A stretch of 64,000 nucleotides of DNA, from the NCBI GenBank assembly GCA_950097015.1, contig CATNEN010000005.1, positions 1,860,001 to 1,924,000 of the forward strand. The letters are read 5' to 3'. The translations under genes were made by a program, and so were the position numbers. Shown in pieces: positions 20,781 to 61,141 of this stretch. Numbering within the stretch: the stretch's first letter is position 1; every line of letters begins with the position of its first letter. Source of the DNA: Macrostomum hystrix. Lineage: Eukaryota; Animalia; Platyhelminthes. Below the pieces are notes generated by a model. The model worked only from the letters and a program-made list of their open reading frames with translations. It was not told where the DNA came from and made no database searches.

Positions 20781-23700
20781 ATGGGTAGATTACAGATTGT
20801 TCTGGTTCTGGCAGCAATGGCCGCCATTCTCGGTTTGTATCTGTTGTCATTGTCAGTCACCAGCCTAGTAACCAGCTTGGTACCGCCAAGCTTCTATGCT
20901 ACTGCGGCCAGGTTTCCGGGAGGATGCGGCGACGAGTGGCCTCCGCCGAAGCATATTGATCCCGAGGTCTTTCAAAGTATCGAACAGGTGAGTCAACGGT
21001 GTCTAACAGTAGATAGTTGTGTCTAACATGAAACCCTTGTGTCTAACATGAAACCCTTGTGTCTAACATAAAACCCTTGTGTCTAACATGAAACCCTTGT
21101 GTCTAACAGTAAATAGTTGTCTCTAACATGAAACACTTGTGTCTAACAGTAAATAGTTGTCTCTAACATGAAGCACTTGTGTCTAACATGAAACTCTTGT
21201 GTCTAACATGAAACACTTGTGTCTAACATGAAACTCTTGTGTCTAACATGAAACCCTTGTGTCTAACATGAAACCCTTGTGTCTAACAGTAAATAGTTGT
21301 CTCTAACATGAAACCCTTGTCTCTAACATGAAACCCTTGTCTCTAACATGAAACCCTTGTCTCTAACATGAAACACTTGTGTCTAACATGAAACCCTTGT
21401 GTCTAACATGAAACCCTTGTGTCTAACATGAAACCCTTGTGTATAACATGAAACCCTTGTCTCTAACATGAAACCCTTGTCTCTAACATGAAACACTTGT
21501 GTCTAACATGAAACCCTTGTGTATAACATGAATCCCTTGTGTCTAACATGAAACCCTTGTGTCTAACATGAAACCCTTGTGTCTAACATGAAACCCTTGT
21601 GTCTAACATGAAACCCTTGTCTCTAACATGAAACCCTTGTCTCTAACATGAAACCCTTGTGTCTAACATGAAACCCTTGTGTCTAACATGAAACCCTTGT
21701 GTCTAACATGAATCCCTTGTGTCTAGTATGAAACCCTTGTCTCTAACATGAAACCCTTGTCTCTAACATGAAACCCTTGTCTCTAACATGAAACACTTGT
21801 GTCTAACATGAAACCCTTGTGTATAACATGAATCCCTTGTGTCTAACATGAAACCCTTGTGTCTAACATGAAACCCTTGTGTCTAACATGAAACCCTTGT
21901 GTCTAACATGAAACCCTTGTGTCTAACATGAAACCCTTGTCTCTAACATGAAACCCTTGTCTCTAACATGAAACCCTTGTCTCTAACATGAAACCCTTGT
22001 CTCTAACATGAAGCACTTGTGTCTAACATAAAACACTTGTGTCTAACATGAAACCCTTGTGTATAACATGAATCCCTTGTGTCTAACATGAAACCCTTGT
22101 GTCTAACATGAAACACTTGTGTCTAGCATGAAACCCTTGTGTCTAACATGAAACCCTTGTCTCTAACATGAAACCCTTGTGTCTAACATGAAACCCTTGT
22201 CTCTAACATGAAACCCTTGTGTCTAACATGAAACCCTTGTGTCTAACATGAAACCCTTGTGTCTAACATGAAACCCTTGTGTCTAACATGAAACCCTTGT
22301 GTCTAACATGAAACCCTTGTGTCTAACATGAAACCCTTGTGTCTAACATGAAACCCTTGTCTCTAACATGAAACCCTTGTCTCTAACATGAAACACTTGT
22401 GTCTAACATGAAACCCTTGTCTCTAACATGAAACCCTTGTGTCTAACATGAAACCCTTGTGTCTAACAAGTGATAGCAAACCTAGCAAAACTTTTTCAAT
22501 TAACTCTCAGGTAATACGCGACAAAGGCTTTCAAACAAGAAGCTACAATGTGACGACAGCCGACGGTTACATCCTGGGTGTGCAGAGAATCCTGCCGAAG
22601 GTTCAAAGTCGCAGAACACCCGTTCTACTAGTTCACGGACTGTTAGACAGCGCCTTCACCTGGGTCTCCAATTTGGCCAATCAATCGCTTGCCTACCGTT
22701 TAAGCGAGGCAGGCTATGACGTTTGGCTAGGCAACGTTCGCGGCAATACCTACAGCAAGGCGCACGTGCGGCTGGACCCGACCCATTTGGACTTCTGGAA
22801 ATTCTCCTGGGATCAGATGGCCGAGTTTGACCTGCCCGCAATGATTCAAGCTGTCTTAAGAGAGACTGGAGCTAAGCAGGTGTACTATGTGGGACACTCG
22901 CAGGGCACGGAGATTGCACTTGCTGGTAAGAAATTCCATTTAAATTATCACCAAACATGGTTAATTATCACTCCAGAGACAATACTTATCACTCACTACT
23001 AAAGCACCACCAAAGCAATATCACCAATTAACACCACCCAATCATCGCCACCCAATCAACACCACCCAAACAACACCAACCAATCAAAACTATCCATTCA
23101 ACACAACCAATCAGCACCCGTCAAAAAACGCCGCGAAATCAAAAGCACCGGAAAGGTTTGTCGTACAATTTACGCCCTGAGGGCCAACCTCCAAGGCATT
23201 GCGAAATGTACACGGACGATGAGAAAGTCAGGGCAGATGTACACACCTGTGTGCCTGTGTGCTCAGGAGTCAGCGAAATTGGCAGAATTGCCTCCTAGCG
23301 GGCTGCGGGTCTAGCGTCACCTATGACTCGTATTTAACAACCAAATCAAAACCAACCCATCAACGCCATACAATCAACACGCAATAGTGTGCAAATAATC
23401 CCATCCCGCCGTCAGCTTGGAGCCAAAACCGCACCGTCGGCTCGCTCGTCAAAGCCGCAGCACTGCTGGCTCCAGTCGCCACCGTCGGCTACATCGAGAG
23501 TCCCATCCGGCTGATCGCACCATTTGCCACCAGCCTAGCTGACGCTATCGACTTCTTTGGTCACGGCGAGTTTCTGCCAACCACCAGACTGCTGAAATTT
23601 CTTTCCCTAGCCGTATGCGGCGACGCACTATCGCCACTGTGTAGCAATGTGATATTCCTGCTGTGCGGTTTTGACTGTCGCTACACAAACATGACCAGAC

Positions 23701-29720: not shown

Positions 29721-30756
29721 TTACTTTTTCGCTTTTTTAACTTGTTCTTTTGCCGGTTTAGGCGACAAAAACCAGCGTCGCCAGGACTGCGGCTGAGGCG
29801 GCAACGGCGGCGCTTGACTTGGCAGTGCTGAAGGCCGCGGATGTAGAGGCGGCGGAGACTGCGGCGGAGCCTCATGCTGCCGCTGGCTGTGGAAATCTTT
29901 CAACTGGGTATAAAGTTCATCTAACTCCTCGTGACTTTTTTCTCGTTGTTTTCGTTCGAGTTGGAACAGTGCTTTAGAAGCTGCAGCCTCTGCAACCAGA
30001 GCTGAGCGAAAGCGTTCTAGTTCAACTAGCTGGCTTTTCGTTGACGCGAGAGCTTCCGTTAAGCGATCGATTTCGCTTTGCAGCGTTGCCAAGGTGTAGC
30101 TAGAACTTGGATTTGCAGATTGAAGCGCGTCTTTGTCGTCCAACTCGAGTTTAGCTTCTTTTTCAACATCAGCCTCTTTGAGATAACGTTTAACCTCCGC
30201 TTCGACGGCAACAAAATCAGCGATTTCGGCTTGCCAGCGTTCGCTCTGACACTCCCAAAACTCTTGCCATTGCTGATTGGCCAGCGAAAGCTGAAGAGAT
30301 GGAGGCAGACAGGCAAAAATGACAGAAGTGGTAAAAACTACAGTCTATAATATATCAATTAGGAATTACCTGACCGTTCTCCTTTAAAATTTGTTTTATC
30401 TCTTGCTTGCTCATCGCGTCATTTTCAGAAGTAGCAACAGCAGCAGCAGATTGAACAGAGGGCCCAACCTGCTTTTGAAGTGAAATCAAACTAAAATTTA
30501 AAATACAAAAATTTTTTTTTCTTAATCTACAATGGGTACCTACCTGAATCTCTGACGCAATCAAGACATCAACTAGCTGCATGGCACAGGATGCAGTCTG
30601 GTCGGAATGCAGCAGTCTTGTCAGTGCAAAATGCAGCATATCCTTAGCACTTGCCGCATTGTTGCAGGCTTCGCTTTTGGCAACACAAATGGCACAGGAA
30701 TTGTCAACACAGCAGCAAGGTGCGCAAGACATTGATTTGGCTGGAAGAAACGTTGC
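29721..30756 (-). CDS. Coiled-coil protein, 3 exons (~30756..30544, 30468..30370, 30290..29721), weakly TNIP/CEP55-like
   Basis: GT-AG junctions, all phase 0, give ...KQILKENGQ|LSLANQQWQEFWECQSERWQAEI..., then heptad-rich sequence and a Pro-rich tail. Start codon uncertain. Confidence 0.6.
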
Positions 30757-30834
30757 CTGTATTTGCAAATTTTTGCATTTTTGCGCAATAAATTTGGATA
30801 CAGTTAGAAACTGAATTGCTAATCTAGCCCTAGT

Positions 30835-43400: not shown

Positions 43401-45978
43401 TATGGAGCTGTGCCTGTGGTTAATGTTTAGAGCGTCGGACTCACAATTTGAAGTTGTGAGTCCGACGAATTGTGGAATCAGATTTACTCGTTTCCACAAT
43501 TTCTGTCACACTCAGCTCTACTTTCTGTTCACCCATACAGCTGTTAAAATATGGATGATCGTGCGGCTGACGTAACTGGTCATGAGGTTGGCGTCCCCCT
43601 ATGCAATTCCAGGGATTTCCAGGGAACAGCTGTACGAAGCCTACAGAGATGCACCGCACAAGGCGATCAAGGCGATGACTCATCGATCAAGTGTCCCGTA
43701 CGCTGCGCGTCACTGCTAATGATGCTAATCATTCTAACATACTAATCACAACAAGTCACGCGTCATGTGCTAATCGCAAGCTGCGGCTTCGCTGTCGGCT
43801 ACACGTCTGAGCCAATGTGGTCAGGTTGAAACATTGAATTAACTATAAGTTTGTTCGCTTATAATTAAATCATGACGTTAAATATTTCTGTCAACAAATC
43901 GCGCACATCATCAGTGTTGTCTGAATTTAAAGTACGCCCCCCGGCCTTTTGCTGGAAAAATGACAAGAATTACTGCATATCATATTGTTTGGCGCGCGAA
44001 GCATTTGAATAGTATGAAAAATCACGCGCCGTCGATTATTAACTAACGTGTCTTGAATCGCGTGCACTTTAACCATTACATGCATCGATCGCAAGTCTCG
44101 ACAAAAGTTTTCAAACATGCGATCATGTCCGAATCGACATTAAAAATGGTAATTACGAGCGAATTCTCGAGAGTGAATTTAACTGACGTAAACCTATAGC
44201 CTCATGCCATCCTCACGATATTTGAAAACAGCGTGCGATGGCTGCGATACTGACCAAAATTAAGCGTCAGTGTGAAACTAATGGAAACTTCAGCTGAAAT
44301 TTGTGAGCATTGCAAATGTTTTTTGTATAGCTGAACGCGCGAGATGCTTTTAGGCCCATTTAATTTAAAATAACTGTGAGTTTTTATATCATATATAGTG
44401 CAAACATCTCATGACCATCAGGCATGCAGTGCAAATAAAGTCGATAAAAAACGTTTCAGAAACAGGCAACTACATTGTAGTAAAATCATCTCAAATTCCA
44501 TCAGTGAATATTGGATGTTTAAATAGATGATGCAGTTGATGTGGACTGCAAACTCCTCAGTTTGTAGAGCTGCAGGTGGCTTAAAGTACAGTCCGTTAGG
44601 ATTACGACCTAGCTCGGTGGCAGGCTGAGTATCACCAGGCAATTTTGAACTTGACTGCGCAGCTACCTAAAACGGTGTCAAAGTCGGCGTCAGTTGGGCT
44701 GAACACAACAGTTTCATTTGAACGCGAACAGCTCGACCGAACGGCCAGGTGGGCGGGTGTAAGTCGCGAAGACTTATCAGAGAAAGAGACATTTTGTCTT
44801 TTTTAACGCAAGTAGGTTAACTCAAGGACCACAAGGAGTAGAAGGACGGGAAACTAAGTTTCTTAGAAAAAACCGAAGGCTGGTTTTCACGAAAAAATAC
44901 ACTTCGGAGATAGGACATTTCACATTTTTCCGATTTAAATGGTCACAGCTTTTGGTCGGAAGCAGATAAAAAGCTACTGTTTTGATATAACTTGCCTAAC
45001 ATGTTGCTATACACCGAATGTTATAAAGTTTTACTCATAAAAACTTTGTAAATTAGTACGAAGCCTGCACGAGAGCGGTTTAGTGTTGTGCCGGCCAAGC
45101 GCTCGTCCTTTTATTTCGGTCAACCGGGTGCACGGGTGCAGCTATCGATTGGCCGCAGCCCTGCACCCACAGATGTACATATCGTCAGTAACTGGTCAGG
45201 AAGGAGTTGCTCGTGTTTGCTGCATAGCCCGAGGTCTGCAGCCTCAAACTGATCGAGCTCGCGCGTTCTCCCTTCAGACCAACTCGAGGATCGTGAACTT
45301 CTGTAAACTGCTCCGACAATTGTGAGCTGCAGGCAATTCACACCAAATTGTGTGAAAAAATTTGCGAGCATTGTGACAATATTATATTTAATCCCTCTTT
45401 AATCCCTCCCTCTTATCCCTTTTACTCTTTTTTTACTTTTTTTACTCTTTTATCCCATAATACAATATTTGATATGTATATCGACATGCAGACAAAGCGT
45501 CAGCTAGTTAGTTAATCGATCCTTTTAACTTAAACGGACATGCATTTGATGGGGACAATTCACAATTGAAAGCATAAATTTGTGAGCCATGCAAATAAAA
45601 AACAGAAAGAATTTCATCCTGCGCTCTACAGAAAAGCTTACCTCGCTAATGCATGCAATGTGCAAAAGTTCCTGGTGAAGGTTCGAAATTTGGAAATGTA
45701 ATATGTAATCTTGCAAGCTTATTAACAAAAAGGGACTAATGAAATACTAAATATCGAGCATTTGAACTGCTCTTGCATTCGACATTCGACGATTAGTTTT
45801 AATTGCTGTTATAGCTTCAACAGAGGTTGGACTCTCGTTTTTGTAAACAAAAGCCTTTGTTTTTTAACGTTTTTAACTTATTTAAGGTTTTCGATTTACA
45901 CGTCGTTTTCAGTGACACTTAGGGTAGCTGTATCGTTGAGTAGTTTGGCATGATATAGAGATGCAATATAAAATCTCC

Positions 45979-47582
45979 TCATAAAATCATCATCTCGGCC
46001 TCCTTCAAAGAGTAGCTAGAACCAAACGGGTATTTCCAAACGACGCCATTGGGATTCGGTGTGTCCAGTGCAGCTGGCAGGTTGTAGTACAGACCGTTTA
46101 AGAAGCTCATGTAGCATTTGGTGAACCACCAGCCACCTTTGAAGTATTTGCTGCAGTCGCTGCTTGCACTGCCATCGTTGTCAGAATCCGTGGCGCTGAA
46201 CATTGCCGCGTTGTGCGAACCCAGTCCGTCATGCAGTGATGGATGGCTACCATGGAAACCAGAGACATTCAAGCGAAATTTATTGGCTTCATTGGCGACG
46301 AAGAAGCTGGAGTAGTTTGCCCAGAACTCCGTGTCATTCCACAGCCTCATTCGAATGCCAAGGACTCGACCAGAGGGCCAAGTGAGGGAGTGGATGTTTT
46401 GAAGACCTGTTGAATATGACGAAGACAGACAGATGGTATGAAATGTGGACTTTATAAATGCAAACATAAATACCTACCGATCCAGTGGTTGGTGTGGGGT
46501 CCTTCTCCGAAGCCAACTGCGTACTGGCTCCAGTTGCGATAGAAGCTTGTGGAATTGTCCACGCGACGTTGGATGCTGGTCCAGCAGCCACTGACTGACG
46601 TTACAAAGACCTATGGTGACATGGCCAACTAAAACCTTGCAAAGCTTGTTTTTATCTTGTTTTTATCTTGTTTTTATCTAGCTTTAAGAAGTAATAGCCA
46701 GAATGCTCACTTCTCAGGTACATTGCCACTTACCCGAGTGCAGCAAGGAGACTGATTAGTGCGGGTTGACAGTCTGCGACAGACAGCACCATTTCGACTA
46801 GCTGGAACGTGTTATTGTTAGTTGGTTATTAAGTTTTTGTTTTTTTTGTTGGTTGGTTGGTTGGTTGGTTAGTTGGTTGGTTAGTTGGTTGGTTGGTTGG
46901 TTGGTTGGTTGGTTGGTTGGTTGGTTAGTTGGTTGGTTGGTTGGTTGGTTGGTTGGTTAGTTGGTTGGTTGGTTGGTTTGTTGGTTGGTTGGTTGGTTGG
47001 TTGGTTAGTTGGTTGGTTGGTTGGTTGGTTGGTTGGTTGGTTGGTTAGTTGGTTGGTTGGTTGGTTGGTTGGTTGGTTAGTTGGTTGGTTGGTTGGTTGG
47101 TTGGTTGGTTGGTTGGTTGGTTGGTTGGTTGGTTGGTTGGTTGGTTGGTTGGTTGGTTGGTTGGTTGGTTGGTTGGTTGGTTAGTTGGTTGCTTAGTTGG
47201 TTGGTTGGTTGGTTAGTTGGTTGGTTGGTTGGTTGGTTGGTTGGTTAGTTGGTTGGTTGGTTGGCTGGTTGGTTGGTTGGTTGGTTGGTTGGTTGGTTGG
47301 TTGGTTGGTTGGTTTCCTATACATATTCCTTCACTCACCCACGATGCATTGCGGCCTCTCAGCTGAGTCACCAGCGATGAAGACCAGCAGCTGGTCGGTG
47401 AGCAGGTGCTTGGCAGCCAGCACAGCACACTCCAGCTGAGCTTCAAACGGGTCTGTTCGAGACAGTCTGAATTGTCGGACACGAAGACCACCATGCCAGC
47501 TGCTGCTGTGGACCTCGTACAGGTCAATTTTGAATGCGTCGATTGAAAATAGGAAAACGAGCTGAAGAAAGAGCTCGCGCAT
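45979..47582 (-). CDS. Secreted fibrinogen-related domain protein A, join(47582..47339,46801..46734,46610..46478,46406..45979), 290 aa
   Basis: Signal peptide; [67 protein letters not shown]. Splice phases sum to 873 nt. Confidence 0.9.
46848..47313 (+). repeat. (GGTT)n microsatellite in FReD A intron 1
   Basis: Directly visible. Confidence 0.98.
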
Positions 47583-48107
47583 TGCTGGATTCCTGGGCTT
47601 CAAATGTTTTCAGTCAAGTGAAATCCCAATGCCGTAGGCAAAGCTAATTCAATCCATCTCGGCTTTTACTCAGCGCACAACTTCACTTTCGCCATTTGCG
47701 GGCCCGTGAGCCAATCAGAAGTGCTGAGAGCTGTTTCTGTCCAGACTTTCGTGTATCTCAATTTTTAGCAGCTGGCAGTGAACAGAGTTTTACCTCATAC
47801 TGAGAAAATTATTCAATCCCCTAAAAACTATTTTACTATTTTATTTAATCTTGAGCAAACCTTAGTGTGTCACTCTCACCTGTCAATCATGAAGCTCTCA
47901 AGAAAGTCAAGAGTGATGGATTTAAAACTTGTCTAAGTGAAAATTTCCTCGCTGCCAGAACTGCAGAAGCGATCAATGTACTTCATTATTATTTTGTCGC
48001 AAGTCAGACAACACAACATCTCCTCACAGTCTTCTTGATCTGCAAGACGCATGCAAGACACGACAAGTGCATGCCAATTGATTTATTCTGTCACTGCATA
48101 AAATATG

Positions 48108-49292
48108 TCATTTAATCAGCATTTCACACTCTTTCATTGAGTAATGATAGCCAAACGGCGCATCCCATACAATACCCGTTGCATATTCAGCAGTTTTTAA
48201 AGCATTGGGTGGGTAATGATAAATTCCATTCGGGTTTGTGGTGTGGCACTGGTTGTACCACCAACCTCCTTGATATTTGACAGCGCAGCTTTCACCTGGG
48301 CTCATGTCATTGTCAGCATTGAAGGTAGAAAACATCATTCCATTGGAAATAACCATTGAGTCTCCAATAGCTGGATGGCTCGCAGAGAAGCCGCTAACGC
48401 TGAGTCGGAATTTTTCGGCCTCGCTGGCCACGGAGAAGCTGGAGTAGTCAGCCCAGAACTCCGTGCCATTCCACAGCCTCATTCGAATGCAAAGCGCTCG
48501 ACCAGACGGCCAGGTGAGAGAGAACAGTGCCTGCAAACCTGTGAAAAATTGAGCACTGCAGCTCAGGACTCAGTCAATGACCTCAGTGAGCATTGGATCT
48601 GGTTGAATTGAGGTCTCACCGATCCAGTGGTTGGTGTGGGGTCCGTCTCCGAAGCCCGCTGCGTACTCGCTCCAGTTGCGATAGAAGTCCGTGGAGTTGT
48701 CCACCCGACGTTGGACGCTGATCCAGCAGTTGCTGAGTGACGTCACGAACACCTAAATGATGCAGTGTGTTGTGGCTGAGTAAGAAACAGGCGAAACTCA
48801 GAATCACACTCGGGGAGTAGTCGGGGGAGAAGATTTGTTGAAGTAGTCTCAATGTTATTTCTACTCACCCGGATGCAGCACGGAGACTGCGGAGTTCGAG
48901 ATGTCAGTGTGCGGCACGGATTGCCGCCTTGCTTGGCTGAAAATAAAAAAGTGCTTACGCGCAATGTACGTGTTTTTAAAAGTACAATGTGAACTGCGAT
49001 ACCTGAAGCCGCACTCACCCAGGATGCACTGCGTCTGCTGAGTGGCGGCTCCTCCGATGAAGACCAGCAGCTGGTCAGTGAGCAGGTGCTTGGCAGCGAG
49101 TGCAGCGCACTCCAGCACATCGCTGGCTTGGCTGACGAAGGAGAGAGCGAACTGGCGGACTCGACCGTCACCCGACCAGCTGCTGCTGTGCACCTCGAAT
49201 AACTGCCTCGGATCAACGGTTCCATGAGCAATGTGTAGTAACTCCAGAATATGGAGTAGCACAGCCGCCAGTGTCGTGCATCCCAACCTCAT
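48108..49292 (-). CDS. Secreted fibrinogen-related domain protein B, join(49292..49019,48936..48869,48752..48620,48538..48108), 301 aa
   Basis: Signal peptide; [53 protein letters not shown]. Same intron positions as paralog A; 906 nt. Confidence 0.9.
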
Positions 49293-49609
49293 GATCACTA
49301 GCTTTTGTCAGTAAGTAAATTGCTCTAGCGTAATTCACTATGACTGAGTGTGTGTTTTTATTCTCGCTTCTAATCCTATTAGAAAGCCCATTAAAAACTG
49401 CTACTAAGCCCATTAGTTTCTAGTGTCGCTTGTCGATGAATTAGTTTTTTTCAATTGTGCAACTGTTTGCCATGTCCGATGCTTCTCATCCAATTTGTTT
49501 GCCAGCTGGCATTGTAATGCTGGCTATTCCTGGCTCTCAGATCTCGTATCAACGGTACTTGCCTTGCCGTCGATTGCGAGGCCCTACCTCAGGCGAGCGA
49601 CACTGAGGA

Positions 49610-50540: not shown

Positions 50541-51574
50541 ATTTTGTTGGGTCTAGATTTTGGGTGTTGTGTTCACGGATATTCATAACCGCCCTTTCCA
50601 CTTTCCCTTCCTTGGGAGTATAAAATCTACTGAAAGTAGATCTGAAAGCACTTTGAAAGCTGAAATTATTGAATTAAATGCAAAAAGTGGATGATTTGGC
50701 CATAGACAACATTCGAAAAATTCTTGGACTGAATGCAAAAGGCTATATCATAATGCGACTTGGCCGAGAAGCAAGTTTTTAGTCGTTCTGACGGCCATAG
50801 ATAAATGAATAAACTGGTACTTACTAAGGTGCCTAAGTATCTTATACTGCTCAATACTCTACTCAGTCTACTGTTAGTAGCAAGGATGGCAAACTTAGAC
50901 ATAATGACAAGTTGAGTAGACTAACAAAAAACGGAGACACCTTACGCTAAAGGGTATGGAAAACGTATATTTTAAAATTAGAACGTTATTATGCGGTAAT
51001 ACTACTGATATTTAAATGGCACATACTATGGCTTGCGAAAAGGCCAGGAGCAAGGAAGTTAACAGCTCAGTATTTTCTGATTTGACATATTGGTGCTGAA
51101 ATTTTTAAAATAAAAACATGGCTGATCAGGAGGACAACGATTGCTGCAAGGACTCAGATTGCTCCAGGTCCTTGTTATGCAGGTGAGAGCACTTTGTGTT
51201 GCAGCTAACTTGACCCTGGTCCCGAGTTCGAATCTCAGCAGGCCAATATCAAGGTATATCTTTGAGTCATTTCCCATTGCTGCAGTTACAATAGGTGCAA
51301 AAATGGATGTACCAGTCTTGGTTTGGTAGCCATATAGCTGTAAAGTAGGTTTCTTTACAATTACGAGGAATGCGGAAAGCACTATCTATGGCCAAACCCA
51401 TTTTCGTTTGTAAAATTTAAAATCTTTTGAAAAACCAGCCATTTAGAGCCCCAATAGGTGGCCCAAAAATAATTTCCCAAGGGGATAAAAGCAGACGAAC
51501 AGGCACCCTTAGACGAAATATACCTTTCCCTCGGAAACCAACGCCCCCAAACAGGCAAAAAATGTTCCTCCTAG

Positions 51575-52822
51575 CAGAGTTTGTCCCCGTTTTGCAGACT
51601 TTGCCCCCCCATTGCAGAGTTTGTCCCCCCTTAATTAGCAGAGTTTGTCCCCCCCTTAGCAGAGTTTGTCCCTCCTTAGCAGAGTTTGTCCCCCCCTTAC
51701 CAGAGTTTGTCCCTCCTTAGCAGAGTTTGTCCCCCCCTTACCAGAGTTTGTCCCTCCTTAGCAGAGTTTGTCCCCCCCTTACCAGAGTTTGTCCCCCCTT
51801 AGCAGAGTTTGTCCCCCCTTTGCAGAGTTTGTCCCCCACATAGCAGAGTTTGTCCCCCCTTAGCAGAGTTTGTCCCCCCTTAGCAGAGTTTGTTCCCCCT
51901 TTGCAGAGTTTGTTCCCCCCCTTTGCAGAGTTTGTCCCCCCTTAGCAGAGTTTGTCCCCCCTTTGCAGAGTTTGTCCCCCCTTAGCAGAGTTTGTCCCCC
52001 CTTAGCAGAGTTTGTCCCCCCTTAGCAGAGTTTGTCCCCCCTTAGCAGAGTTTGTCCCCCCTTAGCAGAGTTTGTCCCCCCCTTTGCAGAGTTTGTCCCC
52101 CCTTTGCAGAGTTTGTTCCCCCCCCTTTGCAGAGTTTGTTCCCCCCTTTGCAGAGTTTGTCCCCCCTTTGCAGAGTTTGTCCCCCCTTTGCAGAGTTTGT
52201 TCCCCCCCTTTGCAGAGTTTGTTCCCCCCCTTTGCAGAGTTTGTCCCCCCTTACCAGAGTTTGTCCCCCCTTAGCAGAGTTTGTCCCCCCTTTGCAGAGT
52301 TTGTTCCCCCCTTTGCAGAGTTTGTCCCCCCTTTGCAGAGTTTGTCCCCCCTTTGCAGAGTTTGTTCCCCCCCTTTGCAGAGTTTGTTCCCCCCCTTTGC
52401 AGAGTTTGTCCCCCCTTACCAGAGTTTGTCCCCCCTTAGCAGAGTTTGTCCCCCCTTTGCAGAGTTTGTCCCCCCCTTTGCAGAGTTTGTCCCCCCTTAC
52501 CAGAGTTTGTTCCCCCCCTTTGCAGAGTTTGTCCCCCCTTACCAGAGTTTGTCCCCCCTTACCAGAGTTTGTCCCCCCTTAGCAGAGTTTTTCCGCCCTT
52601 AGCAGAGTTTGTCCCCCCCTTAGCAGAGTTTGTCCCCCCTTACCAGAGTTTGTTCCCCCCCTTTGCAGAGTTTGTCCCCCCTTACCAGAGTTTGTTCCCC
52701 CCCTTTGCAGAGTTTGTCCCCCCTTACCAGAGTTTGTCCCCCCTTACCAGAGTTTGTCCCCCCTTAGCAGAGTTTGTCCCCCCCTTACCAGAGTTTGTCC
52801 CCCCCTTTGCAGAGTTTGTCCC
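51575..52822 (+). repeat. 20-22 bp satellite (GCAGAGTTTGTCCCCCCTTA)
   Basis: Visible tandem units with variable C-run. Confidence 0.96.
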
Positions 52823-53389
52823 TATACGGTTCTCGCCTATTCAATTTCGATTTCAGAATTTTGCGATACATTTTCTGCTGCGAGTGTTGTTCAGAGAATT
52901 GATCATAACTTTCTGAAATTATTTCCTCCCATATTGAACATAATTTATGAACAAAAAAACTTTTCTCGATCAAATTTTAGTAGACGAAAATGAAATTTTA
53001 GCCTAGAAAAAACCCTAGGTCAGGGCTATTTCTGTTTCTAGGAACTACCGCCAATGTTTCTATTTTTAGCTCTGATGCTTGTACACTGTATAAGGGCTGT
53101 ACTGTGTGCGCATATGTTACCGTACCCTCACAAATTCTAAATATACATTCCTGACCAATTACGCATGGAAAATCCACAAGCACTGGGCCAGTGTAGGAGA
53201 GTAGAGCTTCTAGAAAGCAGACTTTTTGCCTCTTTTTTTACGGCATTGCCCACAAGAATTGCTTTTTTATGTATTGTAACTTAAAAAAACTAAGTAATTA
53301 AATATACCAAAAAACTCATTGAGTCGACTCAACTTTAGCTTACTGTGTGTGCTTCAATGTGTCTTTACTTTTTGCTTGTGGTTTTACTG

Positions 53390-54500: not shown

Positions 54501-54823
54501 TGTTGATTGTGTTTAATATATATATATTTAATTTTCCATTTAGGAAAGCAAAATTATCGGTAATTCATGCGCAACACATTGCGACCGACTTATCGTGTAT
54601 ATTTTTTAACTATTCGAAAAAAAACTTAAATCAAGATAAAATCAAGATTCTCTAGATTTTAAAGCAATGATGCTTAACAACAACATTCCGAACCCCGTTA
54701 ATTAAAAGACATCTCACAAACACATTGCATCTAGTGAAGTTTACGCTGGATTATCGCACATTTGCATAAGCTTAAGGCAAAATAGATGAGTATATTATTG
54801 TTGAGTAAGAGTCCGTTTTTACT

Positions 54824-55240
54824 CTAGACGTTTCTTGTGTCCCCTGTTTGCTGACGACAAGCCTTGCACTTAAAGAAGTAGCACAGCCACCTGCAGCGAC
54901 AATATCAATTACAATAGACTAGTTTTTTGTTGCTTTACATGCCATCGATTCGTCTAGCTATCTGTCTATTGACATCATCTATCGATCAATCTATCTAACG
55001 ATCCATCTATCCATCGATCAATCTATCTAACGATCCATCTATCCATCGATCAATCTATCTAACGATCCATCTATCCATCGATCAATCTATCTAACGATCC
55101 ATCTAACGATCCATCTATCCATGGATCCATCTAGCTATCGATCCATCTATCCATCGATCCATCTAGCTAACGATCCATCTATCCATCGGTACATCTAGCT
55201 AACGATCCATCTATCCATCGATCCATCGATCCATCGATCC

Positions 55241-55311
<71 letters not shown>

Positions 55312-55462
55312 CATATAGCTATTGATCTATCTCTCAATCTTTCCAGCAAGCTGGCAGTAAGCTCATGTAAGAAGAAGCAAATTAGTGCAATTACCTGCAG
55401 AAGCACCATCTGCAGCAGGTGCTAGTCTCGCAGCATTCGTCATTCTGATGCTGTTCCGCCAT
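54824..55462 (-). CDS. Cys-rich microprotein 3, join(55462..55395,54890..54824), 44 aa: MAEQHQNDECCETSTCCRWCFCRWLCYFFKCKACRQQTGDTRNV
   Basis: aatcATGG start; AG|GTAATT donor, CTGCAG| acceptor; phase-2 intron in an Arg codon; similar to copies at 58012 and 59357. Confidence 0.75.
54960..55330 (+). repeat. ATCT/ATCCATCG simple repeats inside the intron of microprotein 3
   Basis: Directly visible. Confidence 0.92.
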
Positions 55463-55873
55463 GATTAGGCTCGAAATCTAATTTTTGCACTATTTTCGAA
55501 CTGTGAAATGATTCTTACATACTACGTTAAAAACTGGCCATTCTGATCCTAGAATTTATAGCCCAAAATGACTGCGAGTCTCACATGGTAGTACCGCGAG
55601 AAGTACCTACAGTAGTACCTCCACTAGTACCCGATTTTGGGTTGATAATTTTAGACATTACAAAAACTTTTGGCACCAATTTTCTTCTCGATAATTAAGC
55701 ATTCGTTTTGGTTTTAGAACAAAGCAACACAATTAACTAAAGAAATTAAATAAAAACAAATCTGAGATCTTCATTAGAACTACAACGGGATTCCCTTAGA
55801 TGTGACAAAAATAGAATGATGTACATCGTGGTTAAAATTCTGAATAGAGCGTTTTAAATTGTGCACTTATGCA

Positions 55874-57728
55874 AGACAAAGCTTCCACCTGACCTGTTAG
55901 ACAAGCCTTCCACCTAACCTGTTAGACAAGCCTTCCACCTGACCTGTTAGACAAGCTTTCCACCTAACCTGTTAGACAAGGCTTCCACCTTACCTGTTAG
56001 ACAAGCCTTCCACCTGACCTGTTAGACAAGCCTTCCACCTAACCTGTTAGACAAGCTTTCCACCTAACCTGTTAGACAAGGCTTCCACCTTACCTGTTAG
56101 ACAAGGCTTCCACCTGACCTGTTAGACAAGGCTTCCACCTGACCTGTTAGACAAGGCTTCCACCTGACCTGTTAGACAAGCCTTCCACCTGACCTGTTAG
56201 ACAAGGCTTCCACCTGACCTGTTAGACAAGCCTTCCACCTAACCTGTTAGACAAGCCTTCCACCTGACCTGTTAGACAAGGCTTCCACCTGACCTGTTAG
56301 ACAAGGCTTCCACCTGACCTGTTAGACAAGCCTTCCACCTAACCTGTTAGACAAGCCTTCCACCTGACCTGTTAGACAAGGCTTCCACCTGACCTGTTAG
56401 ACAAGCCTTCCACCTGACCTGTTAGACAAGCCTTCCACCTGACCTGTTAGACAAGGCTTCCACCTGACCTGTTAGACAAGCCTTCCACCTGACCTGTTAG
56501 ACAAGCCTTCCACCTGACCTGTTAGACAAGGCTTCCACCTGACCTGTTAGACAAGCCTTCAACCTGACCTGTTAGACAAGGCTTCCACCTGACCTGTTAG
56601 ACAAGCCTTCCACCTAACCTGTTAGACAAGCTTTCCACCTAACCTGTTAGACAAGCCTTCCACCTGACCTGTTAGACAAGCCTTCCACCTAACCTGTTAG
56701 ACAAGCTTTCCACCTAACCTGTTAGACAAGCCTTCCACCTGACCTGTTAGACAAGCCTTCCACCTGACCTGTTAGACAAGGCTTCCACCTGACCTGTTAG
56801 ACAAGCTTTCCACCTAACCTGTTAGACAAGCCTTCCACCTGACCTGTTAGACAAGGCTTCCACCTGACCTGTTAGACAAGGCTTCCACCTGACCTGTTAG
56901 ACAAGCCTTCCACCTAACCTGTTAGACAAGCTTTCCACCTGACCTGTTAGACAAGCCTTCCACCTGACCTGTTAGACAAGCCTTCCACCTGACCTGTTAG
57001 ACAAGCCTTCCACCTGACCTGTTAGACAAGCCTTCCACCTGACCTGTTAGACAAGCCTTCCACCTGACCTGTTAGACAAGCCTTCCACCTGACCTGTTAG
57101 ACAAGCCTTCCACCTAACCTGTTAGACAAGCCTTCCACCTAACCTGTTAGACAAGCTTTCCACCTAACCTGTTAGACAAGCCTTCCACCTGACCTGTTAG
57201 ACAAGGCTTCCACCTGACCTGTTAGACAAGCCTTCCACCTAACCTGTTAGACAAGCTTTCCACCTAACCTGTTAGACAAGGCTTCCACCTGACCTGTTAG
57301 ACAAGCCTTCCACCTGACCTGTTAGACAAGCCTTCCACCTAACCTGTTAGACAAGCTTTCCACCTAACCTGTTAGACAAGCCTTCCACCTGACCTGTTAG
57401 ACAAGGCTTCCACCTGACCTGTTAGACAAGCCTTCCACCTAACCTGTTAGACAAGCCTTCCACCTAACCTGTTAGACAAGCTTTCCACCTAACCTGTTAG
57501 ACAAGGCTTCCACCTGACCTGTTAGACAAGCCTTCCACCTGACCTGTTAGACAAGCCTTCCACCTAACCTGTTAGACAAGCCTTCCACCTAACCTGTTAG
57601 ACAAGCTTTCCACCTAACCTGTTAGACAAGCCTTCCACCTGACCTGTTAGACAAGGCTTCCACCTGACCTGTTAGACAAGCCTTCCACCTGACCTGTTAG
57701 ACAAGGCTTCCACCTGACCTGTTAGACA
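55874..57728 (+). repeat. 25 bp satellite (CCTGTTAGACAAGCCTTCCACCTGA), about 74 copies
   Basis: Visible tandem units. Confidence 0.97.
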
Positions 57729-57795
57729 GTTTATTGTCTGGCACAGCAAAAGAAATACCAAAGCTAATTGTCTGAAGTCGGGATCGAGCTAAATT

Positions 57796-58012
57796 TCAAT
57801 CCAGTTTCCAAAGTCCGAAGAAGCCACAGCAGCAAAGGATCCATATTGTTGTCTTCAGGCATCTGAAGAAAATTAAACAGGTAATTATATCGCGACTGCT
57901 TGATTATTCAAGTTCTCTAATTGCTTTTTTGGAGCTATTTTTTACACAAACTCAGTTCTCACCGGCACAGACAAGATCTGGGACCACAGCAGCCACCGTG
58001 TTGATCGGCCAT
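57796..58012 (-). CDS. Cys-rich microprotein 2, join(58012..57963,57862..57796), 38 aa: MADQHGGCCGPRSCLCRCLKTTIWILCCCGFFGLWKLD
   Basis: gatcATGG start; CG|GTGAG donor, TTTTCTTCAG| acceptor; 100-nt phase-2 intron in an Arg codon; AATAAA at 57730-57735. Confidence 0.75.
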
Positions 58013-58505
58013 GATCAGTTAGACGATAATAACGATTGAATATAAGAAAATATTCCTGTTCGAAATCCCCGAAACACATTAGAGAGTATATAGCAGTTGA
58101 TCATTGTGTTATGTACCATAGTACCCCCATCAGGTACAACCATTATGCTTTTAGCCATGTCGCCACTACCTGATTAAGATGATATTTTTATGAGGAATTA
58201 CCTATTAACTAATATTGTACAACCGGCGCTGAACTTGATTTAAAAATAGTTCAGCGTCCTATAACTATGTACATGTACTCTATAGTTGTAACTCTGCTAT
58301 TTTGAAAAATGAACCAATTCCGATAAAAATAAGTTTTAAGACAAATCTCTTGAAATCTATTTTTCTACTTTGCAAACCTTGCAAACTTGACGGCCTTAAT
58401 GTATATAATTGTTTTATTGCACAAAGTATTCGACTTTTGTACATAAACACTCTAAAAAACAATATTTACTTTATTAGAATTGTTCATGTAGTTCGATTAA
58501 CGTAG

Positions 58506-58812
58506 GAGTCACCTGTTAGACAGAAGAGAGTCACCTGTTAGACAGAAGAGAATCACCTGTTAGACAGAAGAGAGTCACCTGTTAGACAGAAGAAAGTCAC
58601 CTGTTAGACAGAAGAGAATCACCTGTTAGACAGAAGAGAGTCACCTGTTAGACAGAAGAGAGTCACCTGTTAGACAGTTGAGAGTCACTTGTTAGACAGA
58701 AGAGAGTCACCTGTTAGACAGAAGAGAATCACCTGTTGGACAGAAGAGAATCACCTGTTAGACAGAAGAGAGTCACCTGTTAGACAGAAGAGAGTCACCT
58801 GTTAGACAGAAG
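58506..58812 (+). repeat. 22 bp satellite (GTCACCTGTTAGACAGAAGAGA), about 14 copies
   Basis: Visible tandem units. Confidence 0.95.
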
Positions 58813-58871
58813 TTAGTTTGTCATATTCACAGAATAATTTTGGTTTTTAAGATTTCAAACAGTCTCGATCC

Positions 58872-59357
58872 TCATGGCCAGTCTGAAGTTAATCTTTGAC
58901 GCCGGGTGCTTCTTGCATCATCGCAGCAGCATTTGCATCGCAGAATATAGCACAGGAACCTGAAATTTGTGTGACAAAATAGTAGACTCTATACTTTAAA
59001 AAAGTACAGTTTAATTAGATTTTAAACACGGTAAATATGATAGCGTTCAACCTACCTTGGGTTGTAGCCTAGTGGTAAGAGCGTTTGATTCACGGCTCAA
59101 AGGTCGGGGGTTCGATTCTTGACTTTACAGGAACAATTTGTCCTTTTTACAAGACAACTTAACGCTGGGTTGAGGTTGTGTGTAACGTCCCCCCCCCAGT
59201 CCATGGACTGAACAGCCGTACGCAGCCTTTAGATGCTTACGGCTGGCCCAAATGGGGCAGGTGTAATCAATTATTATTATTATTATTATTATTATTACCG
59301 AAAAAGCCAGCAGCGGCAGTACAGGCAGTCGTCATCTTCCTCGAACTGATCGACCAT
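58872..59357 (-). CDS. Cys-rich microprotein 1, join(59357..59299,58959..58872), 48 aa: MVDQFEEDDDCLYCRCWLFRFLCYILRCKCCCDDARSTRRQRLTSDWP
   Basis: catcATGG start; CG|GTAATA donor, AAATTTCAG| acceptor; phase-2 intron in an Arg codon; RFLCYILRCK aligns with RWLCYFFKCK of copy 3. Confidence 0.75.
59059..59297 (+). mobile_element. tRNA-derived SINE with (TTA)n tail, inside the intron of microprotein 1
   Basis: A box TAGCCTAGTGG, B box GGTTCGATTC (59109-59118), body shared with copies at 6.7 and 26.6 kb, TTA tail 59271-59297. Confidence 0.75.
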
Positions 59358-59836: not shown

Positions 59837-60620
59837 ATCTAACAGTTGTGTGTTAATGTCTAACAGATGTGTGTTAATGTCTAACAGATGTGTGTTAATG
59901 TCTAACAGTTGTGTGTTAATGTCTAACAGTTATGTTAATGTCTAAAAATTGTGTGTGAATGTCTAACAGATGTGCGTTAATGTCTAATAGTTGTGCGTTA
60001 ATGTCTAACAGTTGTGTGTGAATGTCTAACAGTTGTGTGTGAATGTCTAACAGTTGTGTGTGAATGTCTAACAGTTGTGTGTGAATGTCTAACAGTTGTG
60101 TGCTAATGTCTAACAGTTGTGTGTGAATGTCTAACAGTTGTGTGTTAATGTCTAACAGTTGTGTGTGAATGTCTAACAGTTGTGCGTTAATGTCTAACAG
60201 TTGTGTGTGAATGTCTAACAGTTGTGTGTGAATGTCTAACAGTTGTGTGTGAATGTCTAACAGTTGTGTGCTAATGTCTAACAGTTGTGTGAATGTCTAA
60301 CAGTTGTGTGTTAATGTCTAACAGTTGTGTGTGAATGTCTAACAGTTGTGTGTGAATGTCTAACAGTTGTGTGTGAATGTCTAACAGTTGTGTGTGAATG
60401 TCTAACAGATGTGCGTTAATGTCTAACAGTTGTGTGTTAATGTCTAACAGTTGTGTGTGAATGTCTAACAGATGTGCGTTAATGTCTAACAGTTGTGCGT
60501 TAATGTCTAACAGTTGTGTGTGAATGTCTAACAGTTGTGTGTTAATTTCTAATAGTTGTGTGTTAATGTCTAATAGTTGTGTGCTAATGTCTAACAGTTG
60601 TGTGTTAATGTCTAACAGAT
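59837..60620 (+). repeat. 21 bp satellite (AATGTCTAACAGTTGTGTGTG)
   Basis: Visible tandem units; explains the INTQLLD ORF. Confidence 0.96.
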
Positions 60621-60853
60621 GTTCACAGATTTTACAATTCTTTGTAATGCGGTTGTAACGCAACGACGTCGTACCGAATAATTAATCAGCACTGTTTACA
60701 CAGCAAGGATGCTCATTCAAATCATTTGTCTATGGCCAAAGTTTTCACAGTAAACAAGTTAACATTTTATTTCTATAAGTTGTCTGTGCTTTTCCCAAAA
60801 TATACGTAGCATATGAGTAAGCGTTTATAAATTTGTTACAAGTACATAATACA

Positions 60854-61141
60854 ATGTCGTCAGTAAATAGAACAGCAATCGTGGAACGGTTCGACTTAAA
60901 CTACATTCGTAGACATGCTTATCAACCTGAGATGATTGACTTCAAGCCAAAAAAGCTTCAAGAATTCTTCCTCCCCATTGGCAGTGTGCTGCTAGCCATT
61001 CTCTTTGGCATCGCCACAGTGATCGAATTCATCTGGCGTTTACGTCGCAACAAACGGCTGGCGGCTAGGGAAGTGAAGGAGGTTCGCTACATTGACCCCA
61101 TGCCAAACCTGTCAAAGCGGGAGTTTAAAAAAGTTAAATAA
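60854..61141 (+). CDS. 95-aa single-pass membrane protein of unknown function
   Basis: ATG at 60854; hydrophobic FFLPIGSVLLAILFGIATVIEFIW followed by basic RLRRNKR; GC content higher than the flanks. Confidence 0.55.
   Translation: MSSVNRTAIVERFDLNYIRRHAYQPEMIDFKPKKLQEFFLPIGSVLLAILFGIATVIEFIWRLRRNKRLAAREVKEVRYIDPMPNLSKREFKKVK

What the first reader, a model, noticed from the sequence alone, without database searches (positions are those of the whole stretch)
54824..59357. Hidden cluster of three two-exon genes for 38-48 aa cysteine-rich microproteins
Seen: three minus-strand ATG-GT/AG-stop units too short for the ORF track. All start with ATC-ATG-G, all have a phase-2 intron inside an Arg codon preceded by Cys-rich sequence, and all encode M(A/V)(D/E)Q, an acidic or polar N-terminus, 6-9 Cys and a hydrophobic/aromatic core (RWLCYFFKCK, RFLCYILRCKCCC, RCLKTTIWILCCCGFF). 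There is no signal peptide. Inference: a diverged tandem family of cytosolic, probably palmitoylated membrane-anchored or metal-binding peptides, loosely like CYSTM or cysteine-string modules. I do not recognise the family.
Basis: partly seen in the sequence, partly recalled or inferred. Interest (0 to 1): 0.85.

Follow-up and report, generated by a model that had tools for sequence, protein, structure and literature searches.

The report
Four tiny cysteine-rich flatworm genes
A Macrostomum flatworm carries four neighbouring, overlooked two-exon genes for 36-48-residue cysteine-rich proteins that show clear signs of selection on the protein and look built to cling to the inner face of a membrane through attached fatty acids; no database searched names the family, and neither expression nor function is shown.

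Summary
The three minus-strand gene models are correct (48, 38, 44 aa; 8, 8, 9 Cys; phase-2 GT-AG intron in an Arg codon). The junction Arg uses four different codons. Nucleotide identity between paralogues is 57/65/34% at codon positions 1/2/3, and 31 of 52 identical residue pairs use different codons, so the protein sequence is what was conserved. The organism is a Macrostomum (PSMA4 93% to M. lignano). Shared core: R-x3-[C/F]-R-h-L-x-Y-h-h-x-C-x2-C, a basic amphipathic helix flanked by Cys, behind a short acidic or polar head; no signal peptide, no true transmembrane segment. Best reading (about 50%): cytosolic, multiply S-acylated membrane microproteins working like CYSTM/CYSPD proteins, but lacking several defining CYSTM features. 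The scan's notes showed no earlier report of this family.

The parts
59299..59357 (-). Gene A exon 1 (ATG at 59357; acidic head and first Cys group; ends CG|GT)
58960..59298 (-). Gene A intron, 339 nt, phase 2, GTAATA...TTTCAG
58872..58959 (-). Gene A exon 2 to stop (hydrophobic core, CKCCC patch, 16-residue tail); product 48 aa, 8 Cys
57963..58012 (-). Gene B exon 1 (ATG at 58012; in-frame stop 6 nt upstream, no AG between)
57863..57962 (-). Gene B intron, 100 nt, phase 2, GTGAGA...TTCAG
57796..57862 (-). Gene B exon 2 to stop; product 38 aa, 8 Cys; AATAAA 60 nt downstream
55395..55462 (-). Gene C exon 1 (ATG at 55462; TATAAA about 97 nt upstream)
54891..55394 (-). Gene C intron, 504 nt, phase 2, holds a (GATA)n-type array
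54824..54890 (-). Gene C exon 2 to stop; product 44 aa, 9 Cys
51118..51182 (+). Gene D exon 1 (new; ATG at 51118; in-frame stop 9 nt upstream, no AG between; ends AG|GT)
51183..52856 (+). Gene D intron, 1674 nt, phase 2, GTGAGA...TTTCAG, holds a 20-nt minisatellite (51572-52822)
52857..52902 (+). Gene D exon 2 to stop (CCECC patch three residues from the C-terminus); product 36 aa, 8 Cys. Chosen among several candidate acceptors by similarity to A and C

Best explanation
Four old paralogues encode cytosolic microproteins that are essentially one basic amphipathic helix bordered by cysteines, behind a 10-16-residue acidic or polar head. Inferred mechanism: the protein is made on free ribosomes; the Arg/Lys and aromatic residues of the helix dock on the cytosolic leaflet; DHHC acyltransferases S-acylate several Cys; the peptide then lies on the membrane as a multiply acylated monotopic anchor that organises a membrane domain or regulates a partner membrane protein, as the CYSTM/CYSPD proteins and cysteine-string segments do. 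Shown: gene structure, homology, selection on the protein, lack of signal peptide and of a transmembrane stretch. Inferred: splicing, translation, helix, acylation, location, role.
For: Same intron position and phase, with junction Arg coded CGG, CGA, AGG, AGA. Identity by codon position 57/65/34%, 31 of 52 identical residue pairs synonymous, no similarity in non-coding flanks. Pairwise shuffle z of 3.6-9.2 for five of six pairs. Ungapped junction-anchored columns R(-5), R(0), L(+2), C(+11) invariant; hydrophobic residues at -2,+1,+2,+5,+6 fall on one helix face (100-240 degrees); hydrophobic moment 0.5-0.6; core net charge +2 to +4. Best 19-residue hydropathy only 0.6-1.6 and broken by Arg/Lys. 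Exon 2 of A models as a helix, low confidence. Yeast CYSTM proteins are held at the plasma membrane by S-acylation, not by a transmembrane helix (PMC10840359).
Against: No transcript, peptide, orthologue or acylation data. No Pfam, Atlas or PDB support.
Confidence: 0.5

Rival explanations
1. They are true but highly reduced members of the CYSTM/CYSPD superfamily that lost the Pro/Gln-rich head (same mechanism as the best explanation, but by common descent).
For: Length equals the 35-40-residue CYSTM module; A and B have three consecutive Cys; A and D have acidic residues right after the Cys patch; D ends three residues after its last Cys.
Against: No Pro/Gln-rich head (P+Q 1-4), no room for the N-terminal beta-strand element, Cys patch not terminal in A, B, C (9-16 residues follow), no consecutive patch in C, Arg/Lys inside the helix; no CYSTM hit in Pfam by exon, a weak test because the module would span the intron.
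Confidence: 0.17
2. Cytosolic metal-binding or redox-buffering peptides (metallothionein-like or CDT1/Mnc1-like) that chelate Zn, Cu or Cd through CC and CxC motifs and the acidic head.
For: 17-22% Cys, CC/CxC motifs, acidic heads in A, C, D; some CYSTM proteins are tied to metal tolerance.
Against: Only one Cys column is invariant while Arg, Leu and aromatic positions are kept; 2-7 aromatic residues and an amphipathic face are atypical of metallothioneins (own knowledge); almost no His.
Confidence: 0.13
3. Intracellular structural proteins cross-linked by disulfides in a hardened structure (stylet, sperm bristles, rhabdites, epidermal layer), in the manner of keratin-associated, cornified-envelope or Mst84/87F sperm-tail proteins.
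For: Clustered, small, Cys-rich, fast-diverging paralogues without signal peptide; B holds a GGCCGP stretch; Macrostomum has stylets and bristles and many lineage-restricted reproductive genes.
Against: No repeats or low complexity; a fixed amphipathic core is conserved; no expression data; no paper links Cys-rich proteins to these structures in the library searched.
Confidence: 0.12
4. Secreted disulfide-bonded toxin- or defensin-like peptides whose signal peptide sits in an unseen upstream exon.
For: Weak Toxin_12 match of D exon 1 (E 0.067, below cut-off) and a PDB hit at E 9.4; the genome holds many secreted Cys peptides.
Against: B and D have an in-frame stop 6 and 9 nt before the ATG with no AG between, so no coding exon can be added upstream; conservation starts at the ATG; C has an odd Cys number; Cys spacing differs between paralogues.
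Confidence: 0.04
5. The models are chance or dead copies and make no protein today.
For: No RNA or orthologue evidence was obtained.
Against: All four frames and splice sites intact despite saturated third positions; zero of 300 shuffles give one such exon.
Confidence: 0.04

Closest known systems
CYSTM / CYSPD superfamily (yeast Cpp1-3, plant PCC1 and CDT1, human CYSTM1; PMC2804304, PMC10840359)
   Same: Small, no signal peptide, one Cys-rich helix with a Cys patch, acidic residue after the patch in A and D, plausible anchoring by multiple S-acylation.
   Different: 36-48 aa against 60-150; acidic head instead of Pro/Gln-rich head; no beta-strand element; patch not at the extreme C-terminus in three of four; conserved Arg pair and aromatic residues within the helix; no Pfam hit by exon.
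Multiply S-acylated cysteine clusters of SNAP-25, cysteine-string protein and the PI4KII-alpha CCPCC helix (SNAP-25 in PMC10840359; others from own knowledge)
   Same: Cys cluster next to hydrophobic and basic residues on a helix, no transmembrane segment.
   Different: There the cluster is an anchor inside a larger protein; here it is nearly the whole protein. No homology shown.
Metallothioneins (own knowledge)
   Same: Tiny, cytosolic, Cys-rich, clustered, CC and CxC motifs.
   Different: Lower Cys content, many aromatic residues, Cys positions not conserved between paralogues, no Pfam match.
Small Cys-rich structural proteins (KRTAP, LCE/SPRR, Drosophila Mst84D/Mst87F; own knowledge)
   Same: Small clustered genes, Cys-rich, no signal peptide.
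   Different: No repeats, intron inside the coding sequence, conserved amphipathic core.

Membership tests
CYSTM/CYSPD | C-terminal helix with 5-6 Cys | tested here: inconclusive
   Helical, Cys-rich core likely, but it carries 3-4 Arg/Lys and Cys lie on both sides of it
CYSTM/CYSPD | 3-4 consecutive Cys (hallmark patch) | tested here: inconclusive
   Met in A and B (CCC), split in D (CCECC), absent in C
CYSTM/CYSPD | Acidic residue after the Cys patch | tested here: inconclusive
   Met in A and D, not in B and C
CYSTM/CYSPD | Module at the extreme C-terminus | tested here: not met
   16, 9, 10 residues follow the last Cys in A, B, C; only D (3) complies
CYSTM/CYSPD | Pro/Gln-rich head and N-terminal beta-strand element | tested here: not met
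   P+Q is 1-4 per protein; heads are 10-16 acidic or polar residues (definition)
CYSTM/CYSPD | Match to the Pfam CYSTM model | tested here: inconclusive
CYSTM/CYSPD | S-acylation and plasma-membrane location | not testable with these tools
   Needs acyl-RAC and imaging
Metallothionein | About 30% Cys, no aromatic residues, conserved Cys spacing | tested here: not met
   17-22% Cys, 2-7 F/W/Y, one invariant Cys column
Metallothionein | Stoichiometric metal binding | not testable with these tools
   Needs ICP-MS on the peptide
Secreted knottin/defensin-like peptides | Signal peptide | tested here: not met
   Charged N-terminus; frames closed just upstream in B and D
Single-pass membrane micropeptides | Uncharged hydrophobic stretch of about 19 residues | tested here: not met
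   Best window mean hydropathy 0.6-1.6 with several Arg/Lys; B is the closest

The most novel reading that the evidence does not exclude
An unnamed animal family, unrelated by descent to CYSTM, in which a single S-acylated basic amphipathic helix of under 50 residues is the whole protein and acts as a stand-alone regulator of a membrane protein or of membrane domains, missed everywhere because it is split by an intron into two 14-28-codon exons.
Probability: 0.3. Interest if true: 0.7.

Novelty: new variant of a known kind. Interest (0 to 1): 0.5.

Why it matters
It is a clean case of genes that size cut-offs and homology searches miss, with selection evidence from the genome alone. If acylation holds, these would be among the smallest lipid-anchored animal proteins and a way to test, in a genus with RNAi and transgenesis, what a bare Cys-rich helix does at a membrane, a question still open for CYSTM proteins, whose molecular function is unknown (PMC10840359). 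Without expression, orthologues or function, the interest is moderate.

Tried and rejected
Following the operators' note, database searches were exon by exon and the joined spliced products were never searched or folded; exons were joined only inside scripts to translate and compare the four models with one another. Blank results: Pfam, ESM Atlas, PDB profiles, peptide words in papers, topic searches, scan notes. A degenerate exon-2 DNA pattern gave 26 metagenome matches, none in a Cys-rich gene-like context; taken as chance. Synteny walk to M. lignano: the FAU-PSMA4-D2HGDH block was fetched but the 20.7-kb loci hold no family member; stepping on through a neighbouring fibrinogen-domain gene failed because those proteins have no contig on record; the 95-aa neighbour at 60854 has no homologue. 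No fifth member in the window. The alternative acceptor for C at 54730 was rejected: the 54890 exon matches A exon 2 (z 6.8). The sigma-70 promoter scan is not applicable to an animal.

Full report
Organism and setting. The window is from a Macrostomum flatworm: its intronless PSMA4 (36680-35919) is 93% identical to M. lignano BOX15_Mlig000340g1 and at most 72% to other animals, and the order FAU-PSMA4-D2HGDH is kept on two M. lignano contigs. The window's own proteins are not in the collection, so this assembly is probably not M. lignano Mlig_3_7. The cluster lies between two fibrinogen-domain genes (46-49 kb) and a small one-helix ORF (60.9-61.1 kb), with long minisatellites between the genes.

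Observation. Donors are GTAATA, GTGAGA and GTAATT; acceptors are pyrimidine-rich and end in CAG, like those of neighbouring genes. Coding GC is 0.51-0.52 against 0.32-0.40 in the introns; Cys codons favour TGC (27 of 33), as in the window's known genes.

A fourth member. An unbiased scan for short two-exon Cys-rich models returned a further exon on the plus strand at 51118. The start motif shared by A-C occurs only four times in 64 kb, and the fourth is this exon. It ends in a phase-2 Arg donor; after a 1674-nt intron filled by a 20-nt array, an acceptor at 52857 gives a 15-codon exon resembling exon 2 of A and C. D (36 aa, 8 Cys) faces C tail to tail. Because the motif came from A-C, D is an independent confirmation. 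In 300 shuffles the start motif averaged 0.56 hits and never came with three Cys and a phase-2 Arg donor. No fifth copy was found.

Selection on the protein. The Arg split by the intron is CG|G, CG|A, AG|G and AG|A in A-D. With no gaps, anchoring only on the ATG and the intron, nucleotide identity over 120 codon pairs is 57%, 65% and 34% at positions 1, 2, 3, and 31 of 52 identical residue pairs use different codons, including CGN/AGR and CTN/TTR switches (the six pairs are not independent). Introns and flanks share nothing. Composition-preserving shuffles give z 9.2 (C-D), 6.5 (A-C), 5.2 (B-D), 4.6 (A-D), 3.6 (B-C) and 1.2 (A-B). These are old paralogues kept as proteins, not recent copies or chance frames.

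Are these whole proteins? B and D have in-frame stops 6 and 9 nt before the ATG with no AG in between, so no upstream coding exon can be joined. C has a stop 15 nt upstream; A has 17 open codons. Similarity begins exactly at M-[AV]-[DE]-Q. Start contexts match FAU. So there is no signal peptide, and the products should be cytosolic; Ala-Asp/Glu after Met removal is a usual N-acetylation start (own knowledge).

Anatomy. Each product has a 10-16-residue head (net charge -6, -1, -4, -5), a core of about 18 residues (net +4, +3, +4, +2) and a free tail of 3-16 residues. Relative to the junction Arg, R(-5), R(0), L(+2) and C(+11) are invariant; C(-1), Y(+4) and C(+8) hold in three of four; positions -2, +1, +2, +5, +6 are hydrophobic and fall between 100 and 240 degrees on a helical wheel, with Arg(0) opposite and Cys at the edges. 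Hydrophobic moments are 0.5-0.6; no window is hydrophobic enough and free of charges to span a membrane. AlphaFold2 on exon 2 of A with four sequences gives one helix (mean pLDDT 67), which is weak support only.

Mechanism. A basic, aromatic amphipathic helix ringed by Cys, with no signal peptide, is the usual layout of a segment that docks on the cytosolic leaflet and is then acylated on several Cys. Yeast CYSTM proteins, first called transmembrane, are in fact held by palmitoylation (PMC10840359). I put this working mode at about two in three overall: 0.5 as a separate family and 0.17 as reduced CYSTM members. Metal binding (0.13) and disulfide-cross-linked structure (0.12) remain open; secretion and non-coding status are unlikely. 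None of the mechanistic steps is shown.

Comparison with known families. By the published definition (PMC2804304), CYSTM needs an N-terminal beta-strand element, usually a Pro/Gln-rich head, a terminal helix with 5-6 Cys of which 3-4 are consecutive, and a following acidic residue. The four peptides lack the head, and meet the other points only piecemeal, so I do not file them as CYSTM; they may work like it. They fail metallothionein, secreted-peptide and single-pass criteria.

Limits. By the operators' rule, spliced models were searched exon by exon and the joined step was left out; exons of 14-28 codons are below or near the limits of the search tools, so blanks in Pfam, Atlas, PDB and papers say little about novelty. 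The synteny walk in M. lignano did not reach the cluster. D's second exon is picked by similarity among several candidate acceptors. The scan's earlier notes list other small Cys-rich genes in this genome whose descriptions differ (secreted, Cys/His, or intronless); I could not compare their sequences.

Verdict. Real, selected, four-gene family of Cys-rich microproteins, unnamed in what could be searched; most likely lipid-anchored amphipathic-helix proteins akin in working to CYSTM/CYSPD. New variant of a known kind; interest 0.5.

Noticed in passing
window 60854-61141 (+): Intronless ORF of 95 codons with one hydrophobic helix followed by a basic stretch; no homologue, weak DUF4381 match at E 0.09. 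Possible lineage-specific small membrane protein.
   Followed up: partly
window 44500-49300 (-): Two intact four-exon fibrinogen-domain genes (about 47.6-46.0 kb and 49.3-48.1 kb) and a degenerate copy at about 45.3-44.5 kb.
   Followed up: partly
L001 20276-20713 versus window 44-49 kb: In M. lignano a fibrinogen-domain gene lies on the other side of the FAU-PSMA4-D2HGDH-coiled-coil block and on the opposite strand: either the block is inverted between species or it is a dispersed copy; M. lignano has many near-identical such genes.
   Followed up: partly
window 55874-57728, 58506-58812, 59838-60622, 20999-22468: Four minisatellites of different unit length (25, 22, 21, 20 nt) share the core TGTCTAACA; three of them sit directly downstream or upstream of genes A and B.
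   Followed up: no
window 54904-54890 (-): The last 15 nt of gene C's intron read in frame as a short Tyr-Cys-Arg-Cys-Arg stretch like the end of gene A exon 1; chance or a relic of an internal duplication, with no AG upstream in frame tested.
   Followed up: no
L001 18250-19092 and window 29721-30768: The coiled-coil gene after D2HGDH is conserved in M. lignano but has no called gene in the NCBI annotation.
   Followed up: no
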